This document shows, one piece after another, positions 6,550 through 60,428 of a stretch of DNA of 64,000 nt; positions within the stretch are counted from its first letter, which is position 1, and every line of letters starts with the position of its first letter. The notes under the pieces are model-generated. The model worked only from the letters and a program-made list of their open reading frames with translations, searched no databases and was not told the DNA's origin. The stretch is from IMG/VR virus record IMGVR_UViG_3300033183_000491, positions 1 to 64,000 of that record, one strand, 5' to 3'. The translations under genes were made by a program, and so were the position numbers.

Positions 6550-6604
6550 TTTTTAGTCCTTTAAAAGTAAAGGGTTGAAGTTTAATTTATTATTATTATG
6601 GTTT

Positions 6605-6633
6605 ATTATAACTTTATTAATTTAAATTTACAC
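6605..6633 (-). promoter_or_regulatory. Promoter GTGTAA-N17-TATAAT
   Basis: Exact motif upstream of the MoxR gene; one of 15 copies. Confidence 0.75.
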
Positions 6634-46209: not shown

Positions 46210-46240
46210 TTAATCAAACTTGTTAAAATAATTAATCAAA
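46197..46240. repeat. Exact 22-bp tandem duplication CTTGTTAAAATAATTAATCAAA
   Basis: Copies at 46197-46218 and 46219-46240 span the convergent stops. Confidence 0.9.
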
Positions 46241-47308
46241 AGCATTAATCTTTTTAAGCTTAGCAAGATTTGAAGACATACCCCACCCTACATCATTCTT
46301 CACGTCAGCAAGCCAAGTACTAAACTCAATATCATCATCAAGATTACCCCATACTCTTAACCAACCACTACGATTATCTGAATCGACACATTTCCAACGC
46401 ATAAATGCTTTACCATTTTTTGTTGTTTTTCTAATAACTTCAGTCACGGTAAACCATCCGATTCCACGATCACCTGGATTAATATCAAAAACACTACTAA
46501 TTTGCTTCTGTTTTAACTTTTTAAGAAGACTAGGTGGAAACAATAAGTCATCATTTGCGTCGTTACTGAGTTCAAAATAATTTTTAATTTTTTCTGATCT
46601 TTTCCAGTCAGACACAATTTTATATTTTGATAATAAATCTTCGACGATAGGTGTTAATTCCTCACCTTTTTTAAGGGCGCGTTTAATAGCTGTCTTAGTC
46701 ATTCCAAATCTTCCCTTTTTAAGTAATACATAGTTATCGAGAATTAAATCATGGAGTTGCTTATGATTATCAAGTTTATCGTCTTTAAATTCACTGAGAG
46801 ATTTAAATGCTTCCATCTTTGTTAGGGATGAAAAAGCTGTTTTATTCATCTTTGAATGCTTCCATTCTCCTTCTTCATTATAAAATAGATCTTCTAAATT
46901 ATTGTATGGTCTATTTGCAAATATTTCTTCAACAGCTTTATCACCTACTCCTTTAAGAGACGTTAAAGGTGGAACAAAAGCTTTCAAATCTTCAGAATAT
47001 TCCCATTCTGAACCAGAGTGATTTACATCAATTGCTGAAATGTCATATCCTAATGCTTTTATTTCAGCAATAACTTTTGACATACCTTTAGGGCTGCCAT
47101 TTTCAGATTGTAAAACTGTTGCTAACCATTCTGTTTCGTAGTGTGTGTGTAACCATGCAGCGTAATAAGAATCAATTGCATATGAAACAGCGTGAGAGTT
47201 AGATTGCAAAATACCATTACTTAAGTAATATTGATGATCATGATGTGAAACTTCTAGATCATACGTTTGTTGCTTACCAGTAAATTCAATTGATAAAATA
47301 CGAGGCAT
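46232..47308 (-). CDS. dnaE: DNA polymerase III alpha, C-terminal half (IntC + extein)
   Basis: The 37-aa IntC is followed by SHAVSY, IDVNHS, LTSLKGVG.KAVEEI (HhH), and the OB fold KTTKNGKAFM. Confidence 0.93.
   Translation of the reverse strand: MPRILSIEFTGKQQTYDLEVSHHDHQYYLSNGILQSNSHAVSYAIDSYYAAWLHTHYETEWLATVLQSENGSPKGMSKVIAEIKALGYDISAIDVNHSGSEWEYSEDLKAFVPPLTSLKGVGDKAVEEIFANRPYNNLEDLFYNEEGEWKHSKMNKTAFSSLTKMEAFKSLSEFKDDKLDNHKQLHDLILDNYVLLKKGRFGMTKTAIKRALKKGEELTPIVEDLLSKYKIVSDWKRSEKIKNYFELSNDANDDLLFPPSLLKKLKQKQISSVFDINPGDRGIGWFTVTEVIRKTTKNGKAFMRWKCVDSDNRSGWLRVWGNLDDDIEFSTWLADVKNDVGWGMSSNLAKLKKINAFD
47198..47308 (-). mobile_element. Split intein C-fragment (37 aa)
   Basis: MPRILSIEFTGKQQTYDLEVSHHDHQYYLSNGILQSN|S: block F YDLEV, terminal Asn, +1 Ser. 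Confidence 0.92.
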
Positions 47309-47330
47309 TATAAACCTTTCTTTTTAATTT

Positions 47331-47359
47331 ATTGTACATAATTAATTTTTTGTTTACAC
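47331..47359 (-). promoter_or_regulatory. Promoter GTGTAA-N17-TACAAT for dnaE-C
   Basis: The -35 box coincides with the endonuclease's last codon and stop (GTG TAA). Confidence 0.65.
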
Positions 47360-48340
47360 ATAAGACTTTCCAAATAACCATAATCCTCTTGTTTTATTAA
47401 GAATAATACTTTCTATTTTGTCTAATGTTTCTTTATTAAACGTACCATTTTCTTTATATTCATATTCATCATGAGAAATCCTAATTACAGTCCAACCTTC
47501 TTCTATTAAGACTTCATTTAATTCTTTGTCTTTTTTTGTAACTTCACTAAGATTTCCTTTTTTCTTAAACACGTCTTTAAAATGATGTATACCGTCAAAT
47601 TCAATAACTATTTTATTTTCTAATGACATAATATCAATCTGTCTAGTGTTTGTCTTAGTTGATAAAAACTTTCCTGTTCTTTTAAGTGTTTGATTTCTTT
47701 TAAAAGTATTAGGAAAGTTTTTATCAACAATGTTAAATAAATCACCTTCAGGTTTAGACTGCCAAGATTTATGCATAACTGAGGTGCATTTTTTATAAAA
47801 TTCTCCCGGGTTATTCTTTCGCCATTCTGCAAGTCTATTTGATCTTTCTTTTTGGATATCTTTCCTACTTGAAGTTTTTTTAGCAGTCCTCGAAGATCTT
47901 TCTCTAAATTCTTGCGTTTTGTTTAAATTAGAAAGATTTTTTCTTCTTGATTCTCTAGCAAACTCTGAATTCATAATTCCTTTAGAAATAGATTTTCCTA
48001 ATTTTTCAATGTATTCTGAAAGATCCTCGCCTTTTTCTTTTTTTCTAGATATCCATGCTCCGTTTTTCTTTCCTGACATTGAATATTTATTTTTAGATTT
48101 TTCACACATCGCTAAGCCATATTTTAATTCATATTCTTCTTTACTTAAATTATGATTTTTAATATGTAATTTTATATTTTTTCTTACAAATCCACAAATT
48201 TGACATTTTACATAATCAATATTTTCTTTGTAATTTTCTAATATAAATTTACATTTTTCTTGATGGCTTTTTAATGTCGATTCTTTTATATAAGATTTTC
48301 CACACACACAATCGAAAGATCTTCTTGAATTATCAACCAT
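47354..48340 (-). mobile_element. Free-standing homing endonuclease (Zn fingers + Vsr/EDxHD-like nuclease) between the dnaE halves
   Basis: CVCGK...HQEKC, CQICG...H; SKPE, QIDI, IEFDGIHH, KDKELN and GWTVIRI. Confidence 0.88.
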
Positions 48341-51258
48341 AATGGAAGCATCCTTCCATCTTCAACTCTAAACTTGTGATGCATTGTACATTCAACACTT
48401 TTATCATTTTCCAGCGTAATCTTGAATGTTGGAACTTCTCCATGATCATGGTTTGCCAAAACCTGTGTAAATATATCTTCCTTTTTTTCTTCATCTCTTG
48501 ACTTAACGTAAACTCCAGGGACAACATCTTTAATCTCTTTCGTAGATAAATAATTTCCTTCGTGATCATAAGTATCTATTAAAGTATTAAATAGTAAACT
48601 TTTATTGAAGCCGTAAACAGCGAAACCTTCTATCTCTTCCCAAAGTTTTCTTGATATGTGTTCAGGAACATCATTAATTTCTTTTGCGCCTTTAATAAAC
48701 TTTTCTCTTGCAATTGTTTTTTCATCTTTTTTATTTCCCATAGTTGCAAGATTGTTTTTAACAAGTGTTTTTCTTAACTTGTCAGCTTCACCAGGGTCAA
48801 AACCAGATAGTTTTTGTGCAAGAAGCATAAATTGCTCTTGAAAAACAACATAAGAGAAAGTTGGTCCTAAAACTTCTTCAATAATTGGATGGTCATATTT
48901 AATCTGGTCAGCATTTTGTTTAGATTTAACATATTTCTTGTGAACGTTAGCTTTAAGAGGTCCTGGTCGATAAATTGCTGTAAGTGCAGCTAGTTCTTCA
49001 ATATTCTCTGGTTTTGCTTCTAGAGAGAAGTTTCTTGCGCCAGAATTTGTAAATTGAAATATTCCTACAAATCTTCCATCGTGATATACATGTTTCCAAA
49101 CCTCTTGATCATTTTGGTCGTGAAATCTACAGTTAAGATGTTTGTCAAAAAATTCTTTTGCATCTGAAAAAGTTGGGTTTTTATTGCCTTGTTTTTTCAA
49201 GATTTTATAGATACAATTTTCAATGTCTTTTAGTAATGATAACCCCAAGAAATCAAACTTAATAAATCCATTATCTTCTAGATTTCTAAAGTTTAATCCT
49301 TCTGACCAAGGAGTTTGTAATTCGCCACGAACACCGACAATAGGCATTGTTGTTTCTAAATGTTCTGGATCAGCTACAAGAACTCCTCCTGCGTGACGTC
49401 CAATTGCTCTATTTTGCATAAACAAAGAAGCAATATGCGTTTCTACTTCAGGATACCTTTCCATAAAGTCTTTATATTCAGACGAATATTTTTTACAATC
49501 TTCATGTTTAAGAACAAACACAGATTTTTCTTGATCATCACCTTTAGCCATTTTCATGACTTGTTCTTGAAGAGGTCCAGTAACTTTATTAACTTCATCA
49601 AAAGGAATATCGTAAAATTTTGAAATATCTTTAACTAGAGATTTAAGTTTAAGAGTATTAAAATTTGAAACAGGAATAACAGCATCATTACCATATAATT
49701 CTTTTGCTGCGTTAATTAATTCATCACGATCACCTGCATCCGTATCAATGTCAGGCCAACTAACTCTATGTCGCCCTAAAAATCTAGCCCAAAGAAGATC
49801 GTATGGCAAAGGATCAACTTGCGTAATACCTAACAAATAATTAACTAAAGATCCCGCACCTGAGCCTCTTCCTGGACCAAGTAATGTTTTCTTTTCAGCA
49901 CGTTTAAATATTTCATACATCGTAATAAAATAAGCTTCATGTCCAAGATATTTTATATCTGAAAGTTCTTCTTTAGCTCTTTCAACATATTCTTTATTCG
50001 TATGAAGATTATGTTCGATAAGAGATTCTTTAACTAAAGAAGACAAATGCTGAAATGGTGTTTTGTTTGGTACGTTAATTGTTGGAAGTTTAACTCCTGT
50101 ATCAATCCATGTATCTTCAAACTCATTCCAAACAATATCGTGAGTTCTATTAATAGCATCACTAACAAGTTGCTCATTACCTTTATAAAAATCATATAAT
50201 GGATATGAATCTAAAAATTCATCCCACATTTGTGATGCATTCTTTGGATATAATTCGCATTTAAGGTCTTCAAACTCAGGTAAAGTAAGATTGTCTCTTT
50301 TACCTAACCATCCAAGTTTTTTATATAGTTCTCTTGCTTGCCATTTTTCATTTGAAGGATAATGCGAATCTGCTGTACAGATAAGTGGAATACCTGTTAA
50401 CTTGTGATGTTCAATAAGATAGTCATTAACAGTATGCTGTTTTTCTAATTTATTAAATTGAAGTTCTAATTTAAAATTATTTTCGCCAACGCAAGAAACA
50501 AATCTATCTGTTAGGTTTAATAATTCTTTTTGAATTTGCTCGCGAGATTGATTATGTACTTCACCTCTTAGAATACGATTACTAAAAAGTCCGCCAAGAC
50601 ATGCGGTTGATATATGTAATCCTTCACCATGTTCTTGAAGCATTTGAAAATCAATACGAGGATATCTATAAAACCCGTATTTATAAGATTTTTTAACTAA
50701 AGTAAATAAATTGTGAAGACCTTTTTGGTTTCTTGCAGTTACGACAAGATGATAGCGTCGTTTCCATTCGTCTTTAAGAATATCTACGTTTTTTGTTTCG
50801 TCTTCGTCCTCGACAACTAAACCACCACTTTCATCATCTGCATCAATGTCAATTTTCTCTTTAGACTTCTTTTCAGCTGCAGCAGCTGTCTTAGCATCTT
50901 GAATAGCTTGTTTATGTGCGGCATAATCTTCTTTCCATTGCTGAAGAGATGGAACAAAATAAAATTCAACACCATAAATTTGTCTAAATTTTCTTCCAGA
51001 CTTTTGCATTCTAACTGCATGAGATCGTGCATGCGCAAGTCCATTACCATTACCATGATCAGTTAATGCCCATGCATCCATACCTTGAGATTCTGATATT
51101 ACAAAATCAATGTGGTCTGAAGGATATCCTAATCCATCAAATGTAGATACCTAGGAGAAGGTTGAATGGGCATGCAAACCAACGAATCTGTCGGGTCTAA
51201 GCATATCAAGTTCAACCTTCTCTAGGTACCTCCTTTCTGTTTTAAATGTATTATTCAT
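48286..51258 (-). CDS. dnaE: DNA polymerase III alpha, N-terminal half (PHP + polymerase + IntN), with in-frame TAG at 51151-51153
   Basis: An ATG at 51258 (or 51204) is in frame with the 931-aa ORF; FVGLHAHSTFS-TAG-VS-TFDG, LTDHG, GVE, TADSHY, GRGSGAGSL, WPDIDTD, FDFLGL and YGFNK. Confidence 0.9.
48289..48600 (-). mobile_element. Split intein N-fragment (104 aa)
   Basis: Begins after YGFNK with Ser1 (SLLFNT); block B CTMHHKF; ends at a TAA. Confidence 0.9.
51145..51231 (-). other. 21-bp hairpin in dnaE mRNA enclosing the premature UAG
   Basis: Arms at 51211-51231 and 51145-51166: 12 bp, a bulged C, then 9 bp with one G-U pair; 44-nt loop. Confidence 0.9.
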
Positions 51259-51292
51259 TATATACCTTTTTAATATGTTTAAATTGTGATTT

Positions 51293-51322
51293 ATTATATC
51301 AATGTAATGTTTATATTTACAC
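51293..51322 (-). promoter_or_regulatory. Promoter GTGTAA-N18-TATAAT for dnaE-N
   Basis: Exact motif 35 nt upstream of the ATG at 51258. Confidence 0.75.
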
Positions 51323-51359: not shown

Positions 51360-52553
51360 TTATAGACTTGCTTCATCATTTAAAAGTTTAAAAGTTCTTT
51401 GTTCATTGAATCTCATTACTTTACCATATTTGAGACGCATACTTTCTACACAACTTATTATATTATTTGGACTCTGTGCGTCTTCACTATATCTATTAAA
51501 AAACTCTATTAAAGCATCTAAAGATTTAAATCCTCCTCCAAGACCCCAGTAACATTCGCCTGCAAACCACATTCTTGCTCTATTTGGCATCCATCTATTT
51601 TTAATACACAGATTAATCTCTCTATCAAGACTTTCTAAACCTGTGTTTCCATTAAACAATTGTTCTTTTGTGAAAACAGGGTCAAATAGGTTATTAGTAA
51701 GATTATTTATAGATTCTTTATCAAGTACTTTATTACAAATTGATTTTGTTTCTTCACAAAGACTTATATTTTTAGATCTTATTTTATTAATACAAATTTC
51801 TCTAAAAGCCAATTGTCGTAATATAGGGACATGTTTATTTTCTTTGGTTAACCCTAACGAAGTTTGAGATAAAATTATGTGTATTAATTCTCGACTATCT
51901 ATTACTCCATGATGTAGATACTTAGAAATCTTTGTACTTCCATTTCTACTATTTCTAGTATTAGAATAATTCTCAACAACACTCTTTAAAGAAGATAAAT
52001 GATCTTTTAAAATTAATCCAAAGTTTTGAGCCATTTCAAAATTAACATAGTATTTTTCTCCAAAAGGTTTATAAAAAGAAAAATCTTTTTCTTTAATAAA
52101 AACTTTATCTTTTGACAATCTATTTCGATCCCAAAAAATCCATCTACTCTTTGCAGACATTTTCTCACATTCAGGAATATAAGAATCATTGTCTATTTCT
52201 AATACATTAACGTTTTTAGAGAAATTAATTTTTTTACTGAAAAGTGGTTTGTCATATAAAACTGTATCAACTTTATTTTCTATACAGAAATCTTCTATTT
52301 CTTTTTCTGGATTTTTTGTCTTAAGAATATAAAGACTTTGTCCATATTTTTTTTCTAGTTTATATGCAAAATAGTTTATTGTTTCTTTGAAAAAAGAAGA
52401 GCCAAATTCAGTATATAATTTCTTTGCATTTGAATCGTAATACCAGTTAGAAACATATACTATAGATATTTCTTTATACGTAGAAAAAGCAAATTTAATC
52501 ATAAGACTATTTAATCTAAAACTATGATCTAATACAATTAAACATTTAGACAT
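51360..52553 (-). CDS. phr: DNA photolyase/cryptochrome-like protein
   Basis: TKISKYLHHG, LRQLAFRE, GNTG..SLD, WMPNRARMWFA and DAQSPNN; divergent, with a short C-terminus. Confidence 0.75.
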   Translation of the reverse strand: MSKCLIVLDHSFRLNSLMIKFAFSTYKEISIVYVSNWYYDSNAKKLYTEFGSSFFKETINYFAYKLEKKYGQSLYILKTKNPEKEIEDFCIENKVDTVLYDKPLFSKKINFSKNVNVLEIDNDSYIPECEKMSAKSRWIFWDRNRLSKDKVFIKEKDFSFYKPFGEKYYVNFEMAQNFGLILKDHLSSLKSVVENYSNTRNSRNGSTKISKYLHHGVIDSRELIHIILSQTSLGLTKENKHVPILRQLAFREICINKIRSKNISLCEETKSICNKVLDKESINNLTNNLFDPVFTKEQLFNGNTGLESLDREINLCIKNRWMPNRARMWFAGECYWGLGGGFKSLDALIEFFNRYSEDAQSPNNIISCVESMRLKYGKVMRFNEQRTFKLLNDEASL

Positions 52554-52573
52554 AATAATCCTTTTTTTGTTTT

Positions 52574-52603
52574 ATTATATTGAATTAATATTTATATTTA
52601 CAC
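52574..52603 (-). promoter_or_regulatory. Promoter GTGTAA-N18-TATAAT
   Basis: Upstream of the photolyase-like gene. Confidence 0.75.
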
Positions 52604-52621
52604 AAATAAAAAAGGATTATT

Positions 52622-54991
52622 ATGAATACAAAAAATTTATTAAGAGAATGGAAGACTTTTCTTCTCAATGAACATAAAGTTTTTTCTTTACAAGAAATTA
52701 TTCAAACATTAATACAATCTCAAAGAAGTGAAAAAGAAGTTGCTTATCTTAAAGATTTTTGGATTAATAATAGATTTATTACAAAATATACACAAGTCAT
52801 TCGAGACGAAATTAAATATACTCATGAACCGATTGAAGAAATATTAGATGTTTGCGAGTTACATTACGAAAAAATATATCAATCTGCAGGCCCAGATATT
52901 AAAGATCAAATAGGCAGCGGAAATATTACTATAGACGATCTTAGAAAGCAAATAGATTTTAATTTTAATTTTAATAAAAATGAAATTAGACAACAATGTG
53001 ACTACCAGAATAATAGACCTGTGGTTGGAAATTATCAAGATTTTGATATAGTATATAGTGAATCAGATTTTATAGTGATAGAGCCTAAAACAACAAAAGG
53101 TTCAATAGCTTGGGCTCATGGTAAACCTGACGGTTCAGAAGAAACTGATCAAGATAGAAGAGTAGGTTGGTGCACAGGAGTCTCTTCAGTCAACAATATG
53201 TTTCAAAACTATGCAGGTGATTTACACATGTTTTATGTTATTAATACAGATTATGATAATGATAATTCTAAGAATAGAAGAATATGTTTGTCATTCGTCG
53301 TTATAAATGGTGAGCCTTCCCTTAAAGAAGAATCTTTTTCAACTGTTAATGCTTTAAATAAATCGATAGACAAAGAAGACATAGAAAATATTAAAAATCA
53401 AAAATTCTATCAGAACATCTTAGAAAGACTTCAAGGTAGAAAAGAAACCTCATATCAAAATATTTATAGTAAAGCTTCTATAGGACAAATTATAAGAATT
53501 ATAAAACAGATGAAAAGAAACAATCTTAGTGATAATTTATTAGACGAAGAAATAAAAAATTATATAAGATATACTGAATTTGACGATGTGCTATTACATT
53601 TTTTTCAAGATAAAAAATACGAAGAAATAATTACACGTAAAGTTTCTAAAGATAATGTAAGATTTGATAATACATTTAAAAAAGTATTAGAAATAGACGA
53701 ACTTTTACCGATAGTTGCAAAATATACTCAAGATCAAGATATAATTAAATTTTTAATTTCAAAAAAAATGTTTAATATAAATTGGGAACTTTTCCATAAT
53801 GAAAATGTTGACGAATCAATAAAAAAAGAATTATCTGACTATATTGTTCCTCCTTATGAGACTTTTAATAAAGAAACTCCCATACAAGATTTAATTCATT
53901 TTATAGGACTTTTTCTCAAAAGCCAAAGCACAAAATCTACTATTTTAGAAAATATCTTTAAAAATGTTTCATATGATAATTTAAAAAATATATTTTATTT
54001 ATTATTTATAGAAAAAGACGCAGATGAAATTATTGGTAAATCATTCATTGGAAATGACCATAGTCTTAAAAGCAAAAAAAATCTTTATTGTCAAATCATT
54101 TTATATATTAAAAAAATCAATCCAGAAAAATTTTCTCAAAATTTTGATTTTTGGCTTGACTTATTAATAAATAACTTCTTCACAGATAAAATTCTGGAAA
54201 ACTTTGAAATAAGTTATTTATTATCCGATGTAAATCTAAACGATAGACAAGTAAACAAACTCATCAGACTTTCTATGAGTTTAACAGCAATACCAAATAA
54301 TCGATCAAATGTTAAGTTAATAACATGCTTATATAGTCTCGATCTTAGTGACACTCAAAATAAAAAAATTAACAGCATAATAGAATTTGAAAATGAATAT
54401 TTTTCTAGCAAAATATTCAATAATATTTATTATAACTTAGATAAGTTAAATAACTTTGATATATATGATTTTTCTTTAGAGTTGTTTAATAGTTCAAACG
54501 AATCTCAAAAAAGTTATCTATCACTTGCTGTTCAAAAAGCTCTTGGTGAGTTTTGTCCAGAACTAATTAGTAATTATACAAATAATAGTATTCCTAACTA
54601 TTTAAAACTTTTGTCTGAAGAATGTCTAGATTTACCTTATGAAGAATATAGCAAACTATTTCATCAAGCTAATTTTGATGATTTTGTAAAAGAATTCAAT
54701 AGCGAAAGTTATGAATTTTATGACAAATACATTGAATTCATAGAATATTTTCGTGAATGTAATATAGTTCAAGAAAACCCTGAAGGTGTGTATAATCTTT
54801 TTAAATCAATAGGAATAGATCTTTCTAGTGAAAGATCACTTGAATATTTCTTTTATGGTTTTGAATTTGATGATGTGGAGGAATGTAAAGAGATGTTTGA
54901 GAATGAGCCTTACTTAAAACCAATTTTTGGTCGAAACATAGACTTAAATGAATCTTTATTGAAAAAATATATTAGCTTACTAATTTTTTAA
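52622..54991 (+). CDS. Large hypothetical protein with LLREWKTFLLNE leader and a leader-like C-terminus
   Basis: IVIEP....SIAW....GWCT core; ends LNESLLKKYISLLIF. Confidence 0.7.
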   Translation: MNTKNLLREWKTFLLNEHKVFSLQEIIQTLIQSQRSEKEVAYLKDFWINNRFITKYTQVIRDEIKYTHEPIEEILDVCELHYEKIYQSAGPDIKDQIGSGNITIDDLRKQIDFNFNFNKNEIRQQCDYQNNRPVVGNYQDFDIVYSESDFIVIEPKTTKGSIAWAHGKPDGSEETDQDRRVGWCTGVSSVNNMFQNYAGDLHMFYVINTDYDNDNSKNRRICLSFVVINGEPSLKEESFSTVNALNKSIDKEDIENIKNQKFYQNILERLQGRKETSYQNIYSKASIGQIIRIIKQMKRNNLSDNLLDEEIKNYIRYTEFDDVLLHFFQDKKYEEIITRKVSKDNVRFDNTFKKVLEIDELLPIVAKYTQDQDIIKFLISKKMFNINWELFHNENVDESIKKELSDYIVPPYETFNKETPIQDLIHFIGLFLKSQSTKSTILENIFKNVSYDNLKNIFYLLFIEKDADEIIGKSFIGNDHSLKSKKNLYCQIILYIKKINPEKFSQNFDFWLDLLINNFFTDKILENFEISYLLSDVNLNDRQVNKLIRLSMSLTAIPNNRSNVKLITCLYSLDLSDTQNKKINSIIEFENEYFSSKIFNNIYYNLDKLNNFDIYDFSLELFNSSNESQKSYLSLAVQKALGEFCPELISNYTNNSIPNYLKLLSEECLDLPYEEYSKLFHQANFDDFVKEFNSESYEFYDKYIEFIEYFRECNIVQENPEGVYNLFKSIGIDLSSERSLEYFFYGFEFDDVEECKEMFENEPYLKPIFGRNIDLNESLLKKYISLLIF

Positions 54992-60372: not shown

Positions 60373-60399
60373 ATTTTTTCTCCTTGTTATTTACCATTT

Positions 60400-60428
60400 A
60401 TTATAATTTTTTTTTGTATTATTTACAC
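60400..60428 (-). promoter_or_regulatory. Promoter GTGTAA-N17-TATAAT
   Basis: Upstream of the ThyX-like/NDT operon. Confidence 0.75.

What the first reader, a model, noticed from the sequence alone, without database searches (positions are those of the whole stretch)
51145..51258. Stop codon inside the first catalytic motif of DnaE, on a 9-nt insert that exactly pairs with an upstream arm: candidate ribosomal bypass or RNA-processing switch
Seen directly: from the ATG at 51258 the frame reads MNNTFKTERRYLEKVELDMLRPDRFVGLHAHSTFS-TAG-VS-TFDGLGYP and continues without a shift into the 931-aa ORF. The DnaE PHP motif has fixed spacing, H-x-H-S-x-(Y/F)-S-x-x-D-G, and removing 9 nt restores HAHSTFSTFDG exactly. 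The mRNA forms a 21-bp stem (51211-51231 with 51145-51166) made of 12 bp, a bulged C and 9 bp. The outer 9-bp helix is exactly UAGGUAUCU, the insert. The codons flanking the gap are UCC and UCU, both read by tRNA-Ser(GGA), which is the matched take-off / stop / landing layout of T4 gene 60 bypassing and mitochondrial byps. The 5' arm also covers AGGAGG and AAGG SD-like sequences ahead of the ATG at 51204. Starting at Met 51081 would lose the HxH and Asp metal ligands and the first barrel strand. Inference: synthesis of the replicative polymerase is gated by a compact hop, excision or readthrough element that I do not recognise from any described dnaE.
Basis: partly seen in the sequence, partly recalled or inferred. 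Interest (0 to 1): 0.92.

Follow-up and report, generated by a model that had tools for sequence, protein, structure and literature searches.

The report
Ribosome-hop cassette in phage dnaE
The stop codon inside this marine phage's DNA polymerase gene is the conserved end-piece of a mobile homing-endonuclease cassette, and the polymerase can most plausibly be made only if ribosomes hop over 9 bases, which would make this a second natural family of the rare "translational bypassing" known from phage T4 gene 60.

Summary
dnaE (minus strand, ATG 51258) has an in-frame TAG at 51153-51151 on a 9-nt insert, and a 21-bp RNA helix pairs 51231-51211 with 51166-45. It is not an artefact. 17 distinct relatives keep the insert and both arms, with CG/UG/UA covariation. 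Third-codon positions are nearly frozen in the arms but free elsewhere. Both sides of the stop are under protein-level purifying selection.

Uninterrupted relatives read HAHSTFSTFDG and lack both the insert and the 14-codon N-terminal extension that carries the 5' arm.

In most insert-bearing relatives, an endonuclease-I-type homing endonuclease gene sits just upstream, preceded by a remnant of the original dnaE 5' end cut off at ...HSTF. So the insert is the 3' end of a mobile cassette: endonuclease, new N-terminus, replacement coding stretch, then gap. The window has lost the endonuclease.

Related cassettes at the same place have gaps of 5, 7, 10, 12, 38, 39, 40 and 68 nt, or two stops in a row. 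Most are out of frame, so readthrough cannot explain them. Each has a hairpin whose 3' strand ends at a serine take-off codon.

Best explanation: a UCC-to-UCU ribosomal hop. It resembles T4 gene 60/MobA but is not homologous to it. No experiment has tested it.

The parts
51290..51322 (-). Promoter-like motif GTGTAAAT-N(16)-TATAATAAA upstream of dnaE. Its 5' part matches uninterrupted relatives and its 3' flank matches the cassette copy. This is the likely crossover point where the endonuclease gene was lost.
   Evidence: 4 copies in the window, 0 expected; the same motif occurs twice in endonuclease-bearing relatives, flanking the remnant and the endonuclease gene.
51202..51258 (-). Start codon (51258-51256) and cassette-specific N-terminal extension, codons 1-19 (MNNTFKTERRYLEKVELDM). 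Uninterrupted relatives lack it.
   Evidence: the extension and the 9-nt insert always occur together (35 of 35 loci) and never in the ~57 uninterrupted loci.
51211..51231 (-). 5' arm of the long-range RNA helix. It lies inside the extension (codons RYLEKVE). An invariant GAAAGGAGG (Shine-Dalgarno-like) sequence overlaps its 5' end.
   Evidence: 21 pairs, 99.7% of cells paired. Its three variable positions all keep pairing (AU/GU, CG/UG/UA, CG/UG).
51179..51194 (-). Inner hairpin in the 44-nt loop (CCGAC / GUUGG).
   Evidence: helix 3 is 97.6% paired, with CG to UA double changes in 5 sequences.
51154..51201 (-). Cassette-encoded replacement for the native DnaE N-terminus (LRPDRFVGLHAHSTFS). 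It carries the first PHP strand and the HxH metal ligands.
   Evidence: synonymous differences far outnumber non-synonymous ones per site; endonuclease-bearing relatives also keep the original copy as a truncated remnant.
51145..51166 (-). 3' arm of the helix. It covers the last 4 sense codons before the stop, the stop, GUA and the landing codon.
   Evidence: invariant in 17 distinct sequences except for the bulged base and one covarying G/A.
51154..51156 (-). Take-off codon UCC (Ser35). Its third base is the bulge of the helix.
   Evidence: UCC in 12 sequences, UCG in 4, UCA in 1.
51145..51153 (-). The 9-nt coding gap UAG GUA UCU: stop 51153-51151, spacer 51150-51148, landing codon UCU 51147-51145. 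Decoding would resume at ACA 51144-51142.
   Evidence: The gap is absent from uninterrupted relatives. The recombination breakpoint between sister genomes lies exactly here.
48598..51144 (-). Body of DnaE downstream of the gap (rest of PHP, polymerase core, fingers), up to ...YGFNK.
   Evidence: Pfam; 84% identity to L008 DnaE; dN/dS 0.04-0.1 among gap carriers.

Best explanation
What it is. The 9-nt insert is the 3' terminal 'coding gap' of a mobile DNA cassette that homes into the PHP-motif site of phage dnaE. A complete cassette has four parts in order:
1. A free-standing homing endonuclease with a phage endonuclease-I-type nuclease domain.
2. A promoter copy and a new start codon with an N-terminal extension.
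3. A recoded replacement for the first ~16 DnaE residues.
4. The gap.
In the window the endonuclease gene and the remnant of the old 5' end have been lost, probably by recombination between the two promoter copies. The extension, the replacement stretch and the gap remain.

How DnaE is made (inferred). Ribosomes start at AUG 51258. With UCC (Ser35) in the P site and UAG in the A site, termination is slow. Peptidyl-tRNA-Ser lets go of UCC, the mRNA slides 9 nt, and the tRNA re-pairs with UCU. Decoding resumes at ACA and gives ...HAHSTFSTFDG..., identical to uninterrupted relatives. The conserved helix is the stimulator. Its 3' strand is inside the ribosome at take-off. Re-zipping with the free 5' arm behind the ribosome would pull the mRNA forward.

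Why the gap exists (inferred, by analogy with MobA and gene 60). It separates the half-sites of the endonuclease target that the replacement coding stretch would otherwise rebuild. This protects carriers from cleavage.

Status of each step. Shown: cassette anatomy, mobility, conservation, covariation, and selection on both coding pieces. Inferred: the hop, the role of the helix, and the immunity function.
For: Conservation of the RNA element:
- 17 distinct sequences keep the stop, the landing codon UCU and both arms.
- Pair 12-88 is CG in 8, UG in 4 and UA in 5, and never mismatched.
- Only 3 of 15 third-codon positions vary in the arms, against 16 of 18 outside them (p = 9e-5).

Both coding pieces are under selection:
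- Downstream of the stop, dN/dS is 0.04-0.1 with saturated dS.
- In the replacement stretch upstream of the stop, about 0.6 synonymous against about 0.06 non-synonymous differences per site.

Cassette anatomy:
- The endonuclease gene lies upstream in 11 of 17 unique gap loci and in 0 of 43 uninterrupted loci (p = 4e-8).
- It matches PHROG endonuclease families (3e-18), T7 endonuclease I in the PDB, and PF05367 in its relatives.
- Every endonuclease-bearing locus keeps the original dnaE start truncated at ...HSTF, and that remnant matches the local uninterrupted lineage.

Mobility:
- Gap carriers are scattered over the DnaE tree, with at least 8 changes forced by well-supported branches.
- Sister genomes are 95-100% identical from the landing site onward and unrelated upstream of it.

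The mechanism must be independent of reading frame:
- Homologous cassettes (endonucleases 42-47% identical) have gaps of 5, 7, 10, 38, 40 and 68 nt, none a multiple of three.
- One has a 9-nt gap, UCC UAA UAA UCU, with two stops.
- In one 10-nt gap the +1 frame contains UGA, so a simple frameshift fails.

Shared architecture:
- In every type a hairpin's 3' strand ends at or next to a Ser take-off codon, which is followed by a stop.

No alternative route:
- There is no in-frame start codon between the stop and Met 51081.
- No tRNA gene was found in the window or in 29 related loci.
Against: - There is no protein, RNA or ribosome data. Bypassing is inferred only from comparative sequence.
- The window's gap is in frame, so UAG readthrough is formally possible here.
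- At take-off the 3' arm lies inside the ribosome. How a helix that includes the gap itself could act is therefore unclear, and the 9-bp outer helix is not shared by the other gap types.
- Two gene 60 features are missing: there is no take-off stem-loop inside the gap, and no Shine-Dalgarno-like triplet at the right distance from the landing codon.
- A nascent-peptide signal cannot be separated from the RNA constraint.
- In four short out-of-frame relatives the landing triplet matches the take-off codon at only 1-2 of 3 positions.
- Some endonuclease family members sit upstream of uninterrupted dnaE, so the gap is not obligatory.
- Only 64 kb of the 239-kb genome was scanned for a suppressor tRNA.
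Confidence: 0.65

Rival explanations
1. UAG readthrough. A suppressor tRNA or a near-cognate tRNA inserts an amino acid at UAG, and DnaE carries a 3-residue insertion (S-x-V/I-S) in the loop after the HxH.
For: The gap is in frame in the window type. The middle codon varies only between Val and Ile (GUA/AUA). Most of the 239-kb genome was not available to scan for tRNAs.
Against: - No tRNA in the window or in 29 related loci.
- No other TAG-interrupted ORF, and 7 long ORFs end in TAG.
- Nucleotide-level invariance and covariation of the arms are not needed for readthrough.
- Homologous cassettes have out-of-frame gaps or two consecutive stops.
- The S-x-x-D-G spacing is invariant in every uninterrupted relative.
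Confidence: 0.15
2. RNA-level removal. The 9 nt are cut out of the transcript or edited, for example by cleavage within the helix followed by ligation, before translation.
For: The gap lies in a 21-bp duplex. Frame-independent removal would also explain the 5-68-nt gaps.
Against: No known bacterial or phage system excises 5-68 nt precisely. There is no Rfam match. Duplex cleavage would also cut the 5' arm, which is coding. The historical precedent (gene 60) turned out to be translational.
Confidence: 0.06
3. The helix is mainly a regulatory switch. It would control initiation, mRNA stability or timing, with the stop dealt with in some other way. Alternatively, DnaE is made as two pieces (a 35-residue peptide plus a re-initiated body).
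For: An invariant strong Shine-Dalgarno-like sequence sits at the 5' edge of the 5' arm. The same dnaE is in any case split further downstream by a split-intein-like arrangement.
Against: The internal ATG 51204 is not conserved. No in-frame AUG, GUG or UUG exists between the stop and Met 51081, and none exists in the longer-gap relatives. A body starting at 51081 would lack the conserved Asp and the first strand.
Confidence: 0.08
4. Dead gene or assembly artefact.
For: A stop in a catalytic motif is what a pseudogene looks like.
Against: The same feature occurs in dozens of independent assemblies. There is strong purifying selection on both sides of the stop. The downstream ORFs are intact.
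Confidence: 0.02

Closest known systems
Phage T4 gene 60 coding gap with the MobA homing endonuclease (Bonocora et al. 2011, from my own knowledge; Manning and Atkins, bioRxiv 10.1101/2022.08.31.505936)
   Same: - A stop-containing gap directly after the take-off codon, with a synonymous landing codon.
- A cassette made of a homing endonuclease, a new N-terminal extension, a replacement stretch homologous to the displaced host sequence, and the gap.
- Insertion in a metal-binding motif of an essential replication enzyme.
- Repeated independent insertions.
- Loss of the endonuclease while the gap is retained.
- An upstream stem-loop close to the take-off codon.
   Different: - Host gene is dnaE, not the topoisomerase.
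- Ser codons are used, not Gly or Asp.
- The nuclease is of the endonuclease-I (PD-(D/E)xK) type, not the HNH-type MobA.
- Gaps are 5-68 nt (9 in the window), not about 50.
- The window type has no stem-loop inside the gap and no correctly spaced mini Shine-Dalgarno element.
- The upstream helix is the best-conserved element here, whereas the gene 60 5' stem-loop is not conserved between clades.
- Only a useless 19-residue remnant lies upstream, not a functional subunit.
- There is no sequence homology.
Short 'stop-hopping' in E. coli (Weiss et al. 1987 and O'Connor et al. 1989, from my own knowledge; summarised as hopping over a slow-to-decode codon, with 9 nucleotides specifying one amino acid)
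   Same: Peptidyl-tRNA detaches at a codon followed by a stop and re-pairs with a synonymous codon a few bases downstream.
   Different: Those events are low-efficiency, were found in reporters, and span 6 nt. Here the hop would be 9 nt, natural, essential for an essential enzyme, and flanked by a selected RNA helix.
byp elements of Magnusiomyces mitochondria (Lang et al. 2014, from my own knowledge; cited)
   Same: Mobile inserts of tens of nucleotides with hairpins, bounded by matched or near-matched codons, with tolerance for imperfect landing matches. The 38-40-nt and 68-nt relatives resemble these.
   Different: The byps are mitochondrial, occur many per genome in many genes, and have no associated endonuclease. 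The dnaE cassettes use a single site.
Fractured genes: free-standing homing endonucleases splitting phage replication genes, including dnaE, in marine metagenomes (Dassa et al. 2009, PMC2677866)
   Same: The same kind of phages and the same host gene, with endonuclease genes inserted at conserved motifs. The window's dnaE also shows this arrangement at its 3' part.
   Different: There, function is restored by split inteins at the protein level. At the 5' site studied here there is no intein, and the proposed rescue is translational.

Membership tests
Homing-endonuclease-borne translational bypass cassette of the T4 gene 60 type | Take-off and landing codons readable by one peptidyl-tRNA | tested here: met
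   Window: UCC to UCU. Relatives: UCG or UCA to UCU. UCG to UCG in L068 and L111, and UCC to UCU in L170. In four short out-of-frame types only 1-2 of 3 positions match.
Homing-endonuclease-borne translational bypass cassette of the T4 gene 60 type | [quoted passage not shown] | tested here: met
   UAG in all 17 distinct window-type sequences. UAA or UAG in all other types except the 68-nt L110.
Homing-endonuclease-borne translational bypass cassette of the T4 gene 60 type | Stem-loop inside the gap, starting at or just after the take-off codon | tested here: not met
   The window's 9-nt gap has no room for more than a 3-bp mini-hairpin. GC-rich gap hairpins with compensatory changes do exist in the 38-40-nt and 68-nt relatives.
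Homing-endonuclease-borne translational bypass cassette of the T4 gene 60 type | Upstream (5') stem-loop close to the take-off codon | tested here: met
   In every gap type a hairpin's 3' strand ends at or next to the take-off codon. The window type extends it through the gap, and covariation supports it.
Homing-endonuclease-borne translational bypass cassette of the T4 gene 60 type | Nascent-peptide signal encoded upstream | tested here: inconclusive
   A cassette-specific extension (…ERRYLEK…) always accompanies the gap. However, its invariance is explained by RNA pairing, and Tyr is replaced by Cys in 6 of 17 sequences through a change that keeps a G-U pair.
Homing-endonuclease-borne translational bypass cassette of the T4 gene 60 type | Shine-Dalgarno-like triplet 5-6 nt 5' of the landing codon | tested here: not met
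   The only candidate is AGG, 2 nt before UCU, and it is lost in the AUA variants. A strong GGAGG lies 75 nt upstream, opposite the landing codon in the helix. Its meaning is unknown.
Homing-endonuclease-borne translational bypass cassette of the T4 gene 60 type | Cassette layout: endonuclease gene, new N-terminus, replacement of the displaced host coding stretch, gap. Multiple insertions, with later endonuclease loss. | tested here: met
   layout and association; mobility; endonuclease-less state of the window.
Homing-endonuclease-borne translational bypass cassette of the T4 gene 60 type | Homology to the gene 60 cassette, MobA or the topoisomerase host gene | tested here: not met
   The host gene is dnaE. 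The nuclease domain is Phage_endo_I / T7 endonuclease I-like. The codons and the gap sequence are unrelated. So this works like gene 60 but is not a member of its lineage.
Homing-endonuclease-borne translational bypass cassette of the T4 gene 60 type | One continuous protein made across the gap, and the gap protecting against the endonuclease | not testable with these tools
   Needs mass spectrometry or reporter assays, and cleavage assays.
Stop-codon reassignment or suppressor-tRNA readthrough in phages | In-frame TAG in many genes, and/or a suppressor tRNA gene | tested here: not met
   This is the only site in the window where a short upstream piece is split from a long ORF by a single stop, apart from two same-frame gene pairs separated by TAA. 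7 of 80 long ORFs end in TAG. There are no tRNA genes. The rest of the genome was not available.
Fractured gene with split intein and free-standing endonuclease (applies to the 3' part of the same dnaE) | Host gene broken at a conserved motif, an endonuclease gene between the halves, and intein halves with Ser1 and Asn-Ser at the junctions | tested here: inconclusive
   The break is at GFNK|S. ORF 46232-47308 is 85% identical to the DnaE C-terminus from its residue 38. The ORF between has a DUF559/Vsr-like hit. The junction residues fit by eye, but Pfam finds no intein domain.

The most novel reading that the evidence does not exclude
A whole, previously undescribed family of mobile translational-bypass cassettes exists in the replicative polymerase gene of abundant marine and freshwater phages. 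It is carried by endonuclease-I-type homing endonucleases and has at least nine gap designs (5-68 nt) at one site. The main driver of the hop would be the re-zipping of an mRNA hairpin whose 3' strand ends at the take-off codon. In the window type this helix continues through the gap to the landing codon, and so might set the length of the hop.
Probability: 0.5. Interest if true: 0.92.

Novelty: new variant of a known kind. Interest (0 to 1): 0.88.

Why it matters
Programmed translational bypassing has rested on essentially one bacterial example, T4 gene 60 and its homologues in topoisomerase genes, plus the yeast mitochondrial byps. The most recent survey still calls the gene 60 cassette unique.

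An independent family would matter in four ways:
- It would give natural variation for asking what is truly required for a ribosome to let go of the mRNA and land again. The family has different codons, a different nuclease, a different host gene and a graded series of gap lengths. Its upstream helix is supported by covariation.
- It would show that pairing a homing endonuclease with a bypass gap is a recurrent evolutionary solution for invading invariant catalytic motifs, not a T4 oddity.
- It bears on annotation. Gene callers truncate these dnaE genes at Met 51081 or call them pseudogenes.
- It suggests compact (9-12 nt) hop signals that could be tested as tools.

Tried and rejected
- Nucleotide search of GenBank phages with the 5' region found nothing. 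Protein search found only ~28% identical DnaE. There is no cultured relative.
- An exact 17-mer scan of viral contigs gave five hits in unrelated genes on the other strand (L014, L017, L020, L022, L024). These are chance matches and were ignored.
- General TAG recoding was rejected. A suppressor tRNA was not found.
- The inverted-repeat finder did not list the helix, because the bulge and the G-U pair split it. I relied on folding and covariation instead.
- Rfam gave no match. The sigma-70 scan found nothing on the minus strand.
- An internal start at ATG 51204 hidden by the helix was rejected, because that ATG is not conserved.
- Termination followed by re-initiation was rejected, because there is no in-frame start codon before Met 51081.
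- The 5-nt gap in L083 was checked as a possible assembly error. Against its sister L107 the alignment has no stray indels, and only a patch from the start codon to about 60 nt past the gap is diverged. It looks like a conversion tract, but it remains a single example.
- Searching viral contigs with the endonuclease protein found only close relatives. The large protein search reached further.
- One look-up of a relative returned no DNA.
Full report
**1. The observation**

On the minus strand, dnaE starts at ATG 51258. Translation gives MNNTFKTERRYLEKVELDMLRPDRFVGLHAHSTFS, then TAG (51153-51151), then VSTFDGLGYP..., in the frame of the 931-aa ORF 48286..51081. Pfam finds PHP, the polymerase core and the fingers in the downstream piece. 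The PHP match starts only at profile position 10, so the first strand and the HxH are upstream of the stop.

The arms 51231-51211 and 51166-51145 pair as 12 bp, a bulged C, then 9 bp. The minimum-energy fold of the region contains this helix and an inner hairpin (-50.8 kcal/mol, z = -4.6).

The window is 28% G+C and has no tRNA genes. It shows no general TAG recoding: 7 of 80 long ORFs end in TAG. Apart from two same-frame gene pairs separated by TAA, this is the only place where a short piece is split from a long ORF by one stop.

The window is part of a 239.5-kb IMG/VR contig. It also encodes a chaperonin and a DNA ligase. No cultured phage is close to it.

**2. It is conserved, and the RNA helix is under selection**

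Scans of viral and metagenome contigs gave about 150 loci with related dnaE. They fall into two forms:
- About 57 loci are uninterrupted. They start about 14 codons later and read ...HAHSTFSTFDG...
- 35 loci (17 distinct 105-nt cores) have both the N-terminal extension and the 9-nt insert, and never one without the other.

In the 3' arm, only two positions vary: the bulged third base of the take-off codon (UCC 12, UCG 4, UCA 1) and one G/A. That G/A covaries with a C/U in the 5' arm (CG 8, UG 4, UA 5, no mismatch). Two other 5'-arm changes give G-U pairs. One of them costs a Tyr-to-Cys change, which points to RNA rather than protein constraint.

Third-codon positions vary at 3 of 15 sites in the arms and at 16 of 18 sites outside them (p = 9e-5). 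The inner hairpin also shows CG-to-UA double changes.

The internal ATG 51204 is not conserved.

**3. Both coding pieces are translated**

Among gap carriers the downstream 270 codons have saturated dS and dN/dS of 0.04-0.1. The 16 codons before the stop show about ten times more synonymous than non-synonymous change per site. So the stretch upstream of the stop is a functional part of DnaE and must be joined to the rest. There is no in-frame AUG, GUG or UUG between the stop and Met 51081.

**4. What the insert is: the end of a mobile cassette**

*Mobility.* On a tree of the downstream 250 residues, gap carriers are scattered, with at least 8 changes forced by well-supported branches. Sister pairs such as L001/L060 and L056/L066 are 95-100% identical from the landing site onward and unrelated upstream of it.

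*The endonuclease gene.* In 11 of 17 unique gap loci with enough upstream sequence, an ORF of about 300 aa ending ...WEGK lies about 128 nt upstream of the dnaE start. It is full-length in 10 of them and truncated in one. It is found in 0 of 43 uninterrupted loci (p = 4e-8). The protein has N-terminal zinc ribbons and a C-terminal nuclease domain. The domain matches PHROG endonuclease families (3e-18), T7 endonuclease I in the PDB, and, in its relatives, Pfam Phage_endo_I.

*The remnant.* Upstream of this gene, every such locus keeps the original dnaE promoter, start and first ~19 codons, cut off exactly at ...HSTF. This remnant matches the local uninterrupted lineage, which shows independent insertions into different genomes.

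*The layout* is therefore: remnant | endonuclease, promoter copy, extension, replacement coding stretch, gap | rest of dnaE. This is the layout described for MobA and gene 60 in T4-like phages.

*The window.* The native 397-aa neighbour (51360-52553, also found next to uninterrupted dnaE in L033, L064 and L093) is directly upstream. The intergenic region switches from native-like to cassette-like sequence within the promoter motif. This fits loss of the remnant and the endonuclease gene by recombination between the two promoter copies. L076 shows an internal deletion of the endonuclease gene.

**5. Relatives show that the mechanism must be independent of frame**

In more distant dnaE genes, cassettes with homologous endonucleases (47% identity between L008 and L109; remnants ending ...ILWEGK in L068 and L080) carry other gaps at the same place.

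| Position of gap | Length | Locus | Sequence features |
|---|---|---|---|
| After HAHS | 39 nt | L068 | UCG UAA, hairpin, UCG |
| After HAHS | 40 nt | L080-82 | |
| After HAHS | 38 nt | L111 | |
| After HAHS | 68 nt | L110 | perfect 18-bp hairpin starting at the take-off codon |
| After HAHSxFS | 12 nt | L118 | UCG UAA AUA AAA UCA |
| After HAHSxFS | 10 nt | L109, L166 | |
| After HAHSxFS | 7 nt | L163/164 | |
| After HAHSxFS | 5 nt | L083 | |
| After HAHSxFS | 9 nt | L170 | UCC UAA UAA UCU |

In each case, skipping the gap restores the invariant motif. Most lengths are not multiples of three. L170 has two stops. In L166 the +1 frame contains UGA. Neither readthrough nor a simple frameshift can explain the family.

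The gap hairpins and the upstream hairpins of L068, L080 and L111 differ by compensatory changes.

In every type, a hairpin formed by the cassette-encoded N-terminal coding region has its 3' strand ending at or next to the Ser take-off codon. Only the window type extends it over the gap.

The endonuclease family has 219 clusters. All sampled members sit directly upstream of dnaE, and some of those dnaE genes are uninterrupted. So the gap is a feature of part of the family.

**6. How it most likely works**

*Shown:*
- the anatomy, mobility and conservation;
- the covariation;
- selection on both coding pieces;
- the need for a frame-independent mechanism in relatives.

*Inferred:*
- With UCC in the P site and UAG in the A site, peptidyl-tRNA-Ser detaches, the mRNA slides 9 nt and the tRNA re-pairs with UCU.
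- At that moment, roughly the last 12 nt of the 3' strand are inside the ribosome and the 5' arm is free behind it, held close by the inner hairpin.
- Zipping of the helix at the mRNA exit would pull the mRNA in the forward direction. This idea has been discussed for gene 60.
- The gap would exist because the replacement coding stretch rebuilds the endonuclease target at the right-hand junction. An insert there prevents self-cleavage, as reported for MobA.

*Unexplained:*
- why the window type pairs the gap itself with the 5' arm;
- why a strong GGAGG (AAGGAG in other types) is invariant at the 5' edge of the 5' arm;
- how landing works in the four short types with poorly matched triplets.

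**7. Comparison and novelty**

The system works like the T4 gene 60/MobA cassette but is not homologous to it. It differs in host gene, codons, nuclease family and gap lengths. The window type has no stem-loop in the gap and no correctly spaced mini Shine-Dalgarno element. Its upstream helix is conserved, whereas that of gene 60 is not.

Full-text searches found no description of a bypass in dnaE. The 2022 survey states that the bypass cassette remains unique to the topoisomerase gene. The searchable library does not cover all journals.

I rate it a new variant of a known kind and of high interest. The central caveat is that bypassing has not been shown experimentally.

**8. Seen in passing**

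The same dnaE is broken again at GFNK|S. ORF1 continues into a 104-residue tail. A DUF559/Vsr-like ORF follows (47354-48340). ORF 46232-47308 then resumes DnaE at its residue 38, after ...QSN|S. This is the 'fractured gene' arrangement of Dassa et al. 2009.

Noticed in passing
window 46232-48600 (minus strand): The same dnaE is split a second time at the conserved GFNK|SHA motif. ORF1 runs on into a 104-residue tail starting with Ser (48600-48289). A DUF559/Vsr-like, Ros/MucR-like ORF follows (47354-48340). ORF 46232-47308 then has 37 residues ending ...QSN, followed by SHAV..., and from there is 85% identical to the DnaE C-terminus of L008. It looks like a split intein with a free-standing endonuclease ('fractured gene', PMC2677866). 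Pfam finds no intein domain.
   Followed up: partly
window 6602-6633, 51290-51322, 52571-52603, 60397-60428 (all minus strand): The motif GTGTAAAT-N(15-16)-TATAATAAA occurs 4 times where 0 are expected. The same motif precedes dnaE in many related loci. It is probably a phage-specific promoter.
   Followed up: partly
L006, L009, L010, L012, L013; L083 about 281 codons past the DG anchor: Several relatives have 1.3-1.5-kb insertions inside dnaE. Many ORFs break about 281 codons in, and in L083 the inserted sequence begins CLTGD..., like an intein. dnaE in this phage group is a hot spot for selfish elements.
   Followed up: no
window 51229-51237, and the equivalent place in L068, L080, L109, L111, L118, L170: A Shine-Dalgarno-like AAGGAG(G) is kept at the 5' edge of the upstream hairpin arm in every cassette type, although no start codon follows at a usable distance. 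In the window's helix it lies opposite the landing codon. Its role is unknown.
   Followed up: partly
L110 about 1050-1120: A 68-nt insert at the HAHS site with a perfect 18-bp hairpin that begins at the Ser codon, but with no stop directly after it (the first stop is 6 codons in). It could be a different kind of bypass signal, or a dead gene. There is only one example.
   Followed up: no
L159/L160 and L168: Distant members of the endonuclease family overlap the start of an uninterrupted dnaE. The family therefore also exists without a gap, which raises the question of how those carriers avoid self-cleavage.
   Followed up: no
window 52551-52567 and 52608-52624: A perfect 17-bp inverted repeat covers the start regions of the two divergent genes 51360-52553 (minus) and 52622-54991 (plus).
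   Followed up: no
window 26980-28611 (minus strand): The phage encodes a Cpn60/GroEL-type chaperonin (Pfam 4e-58).
   Followed up: no
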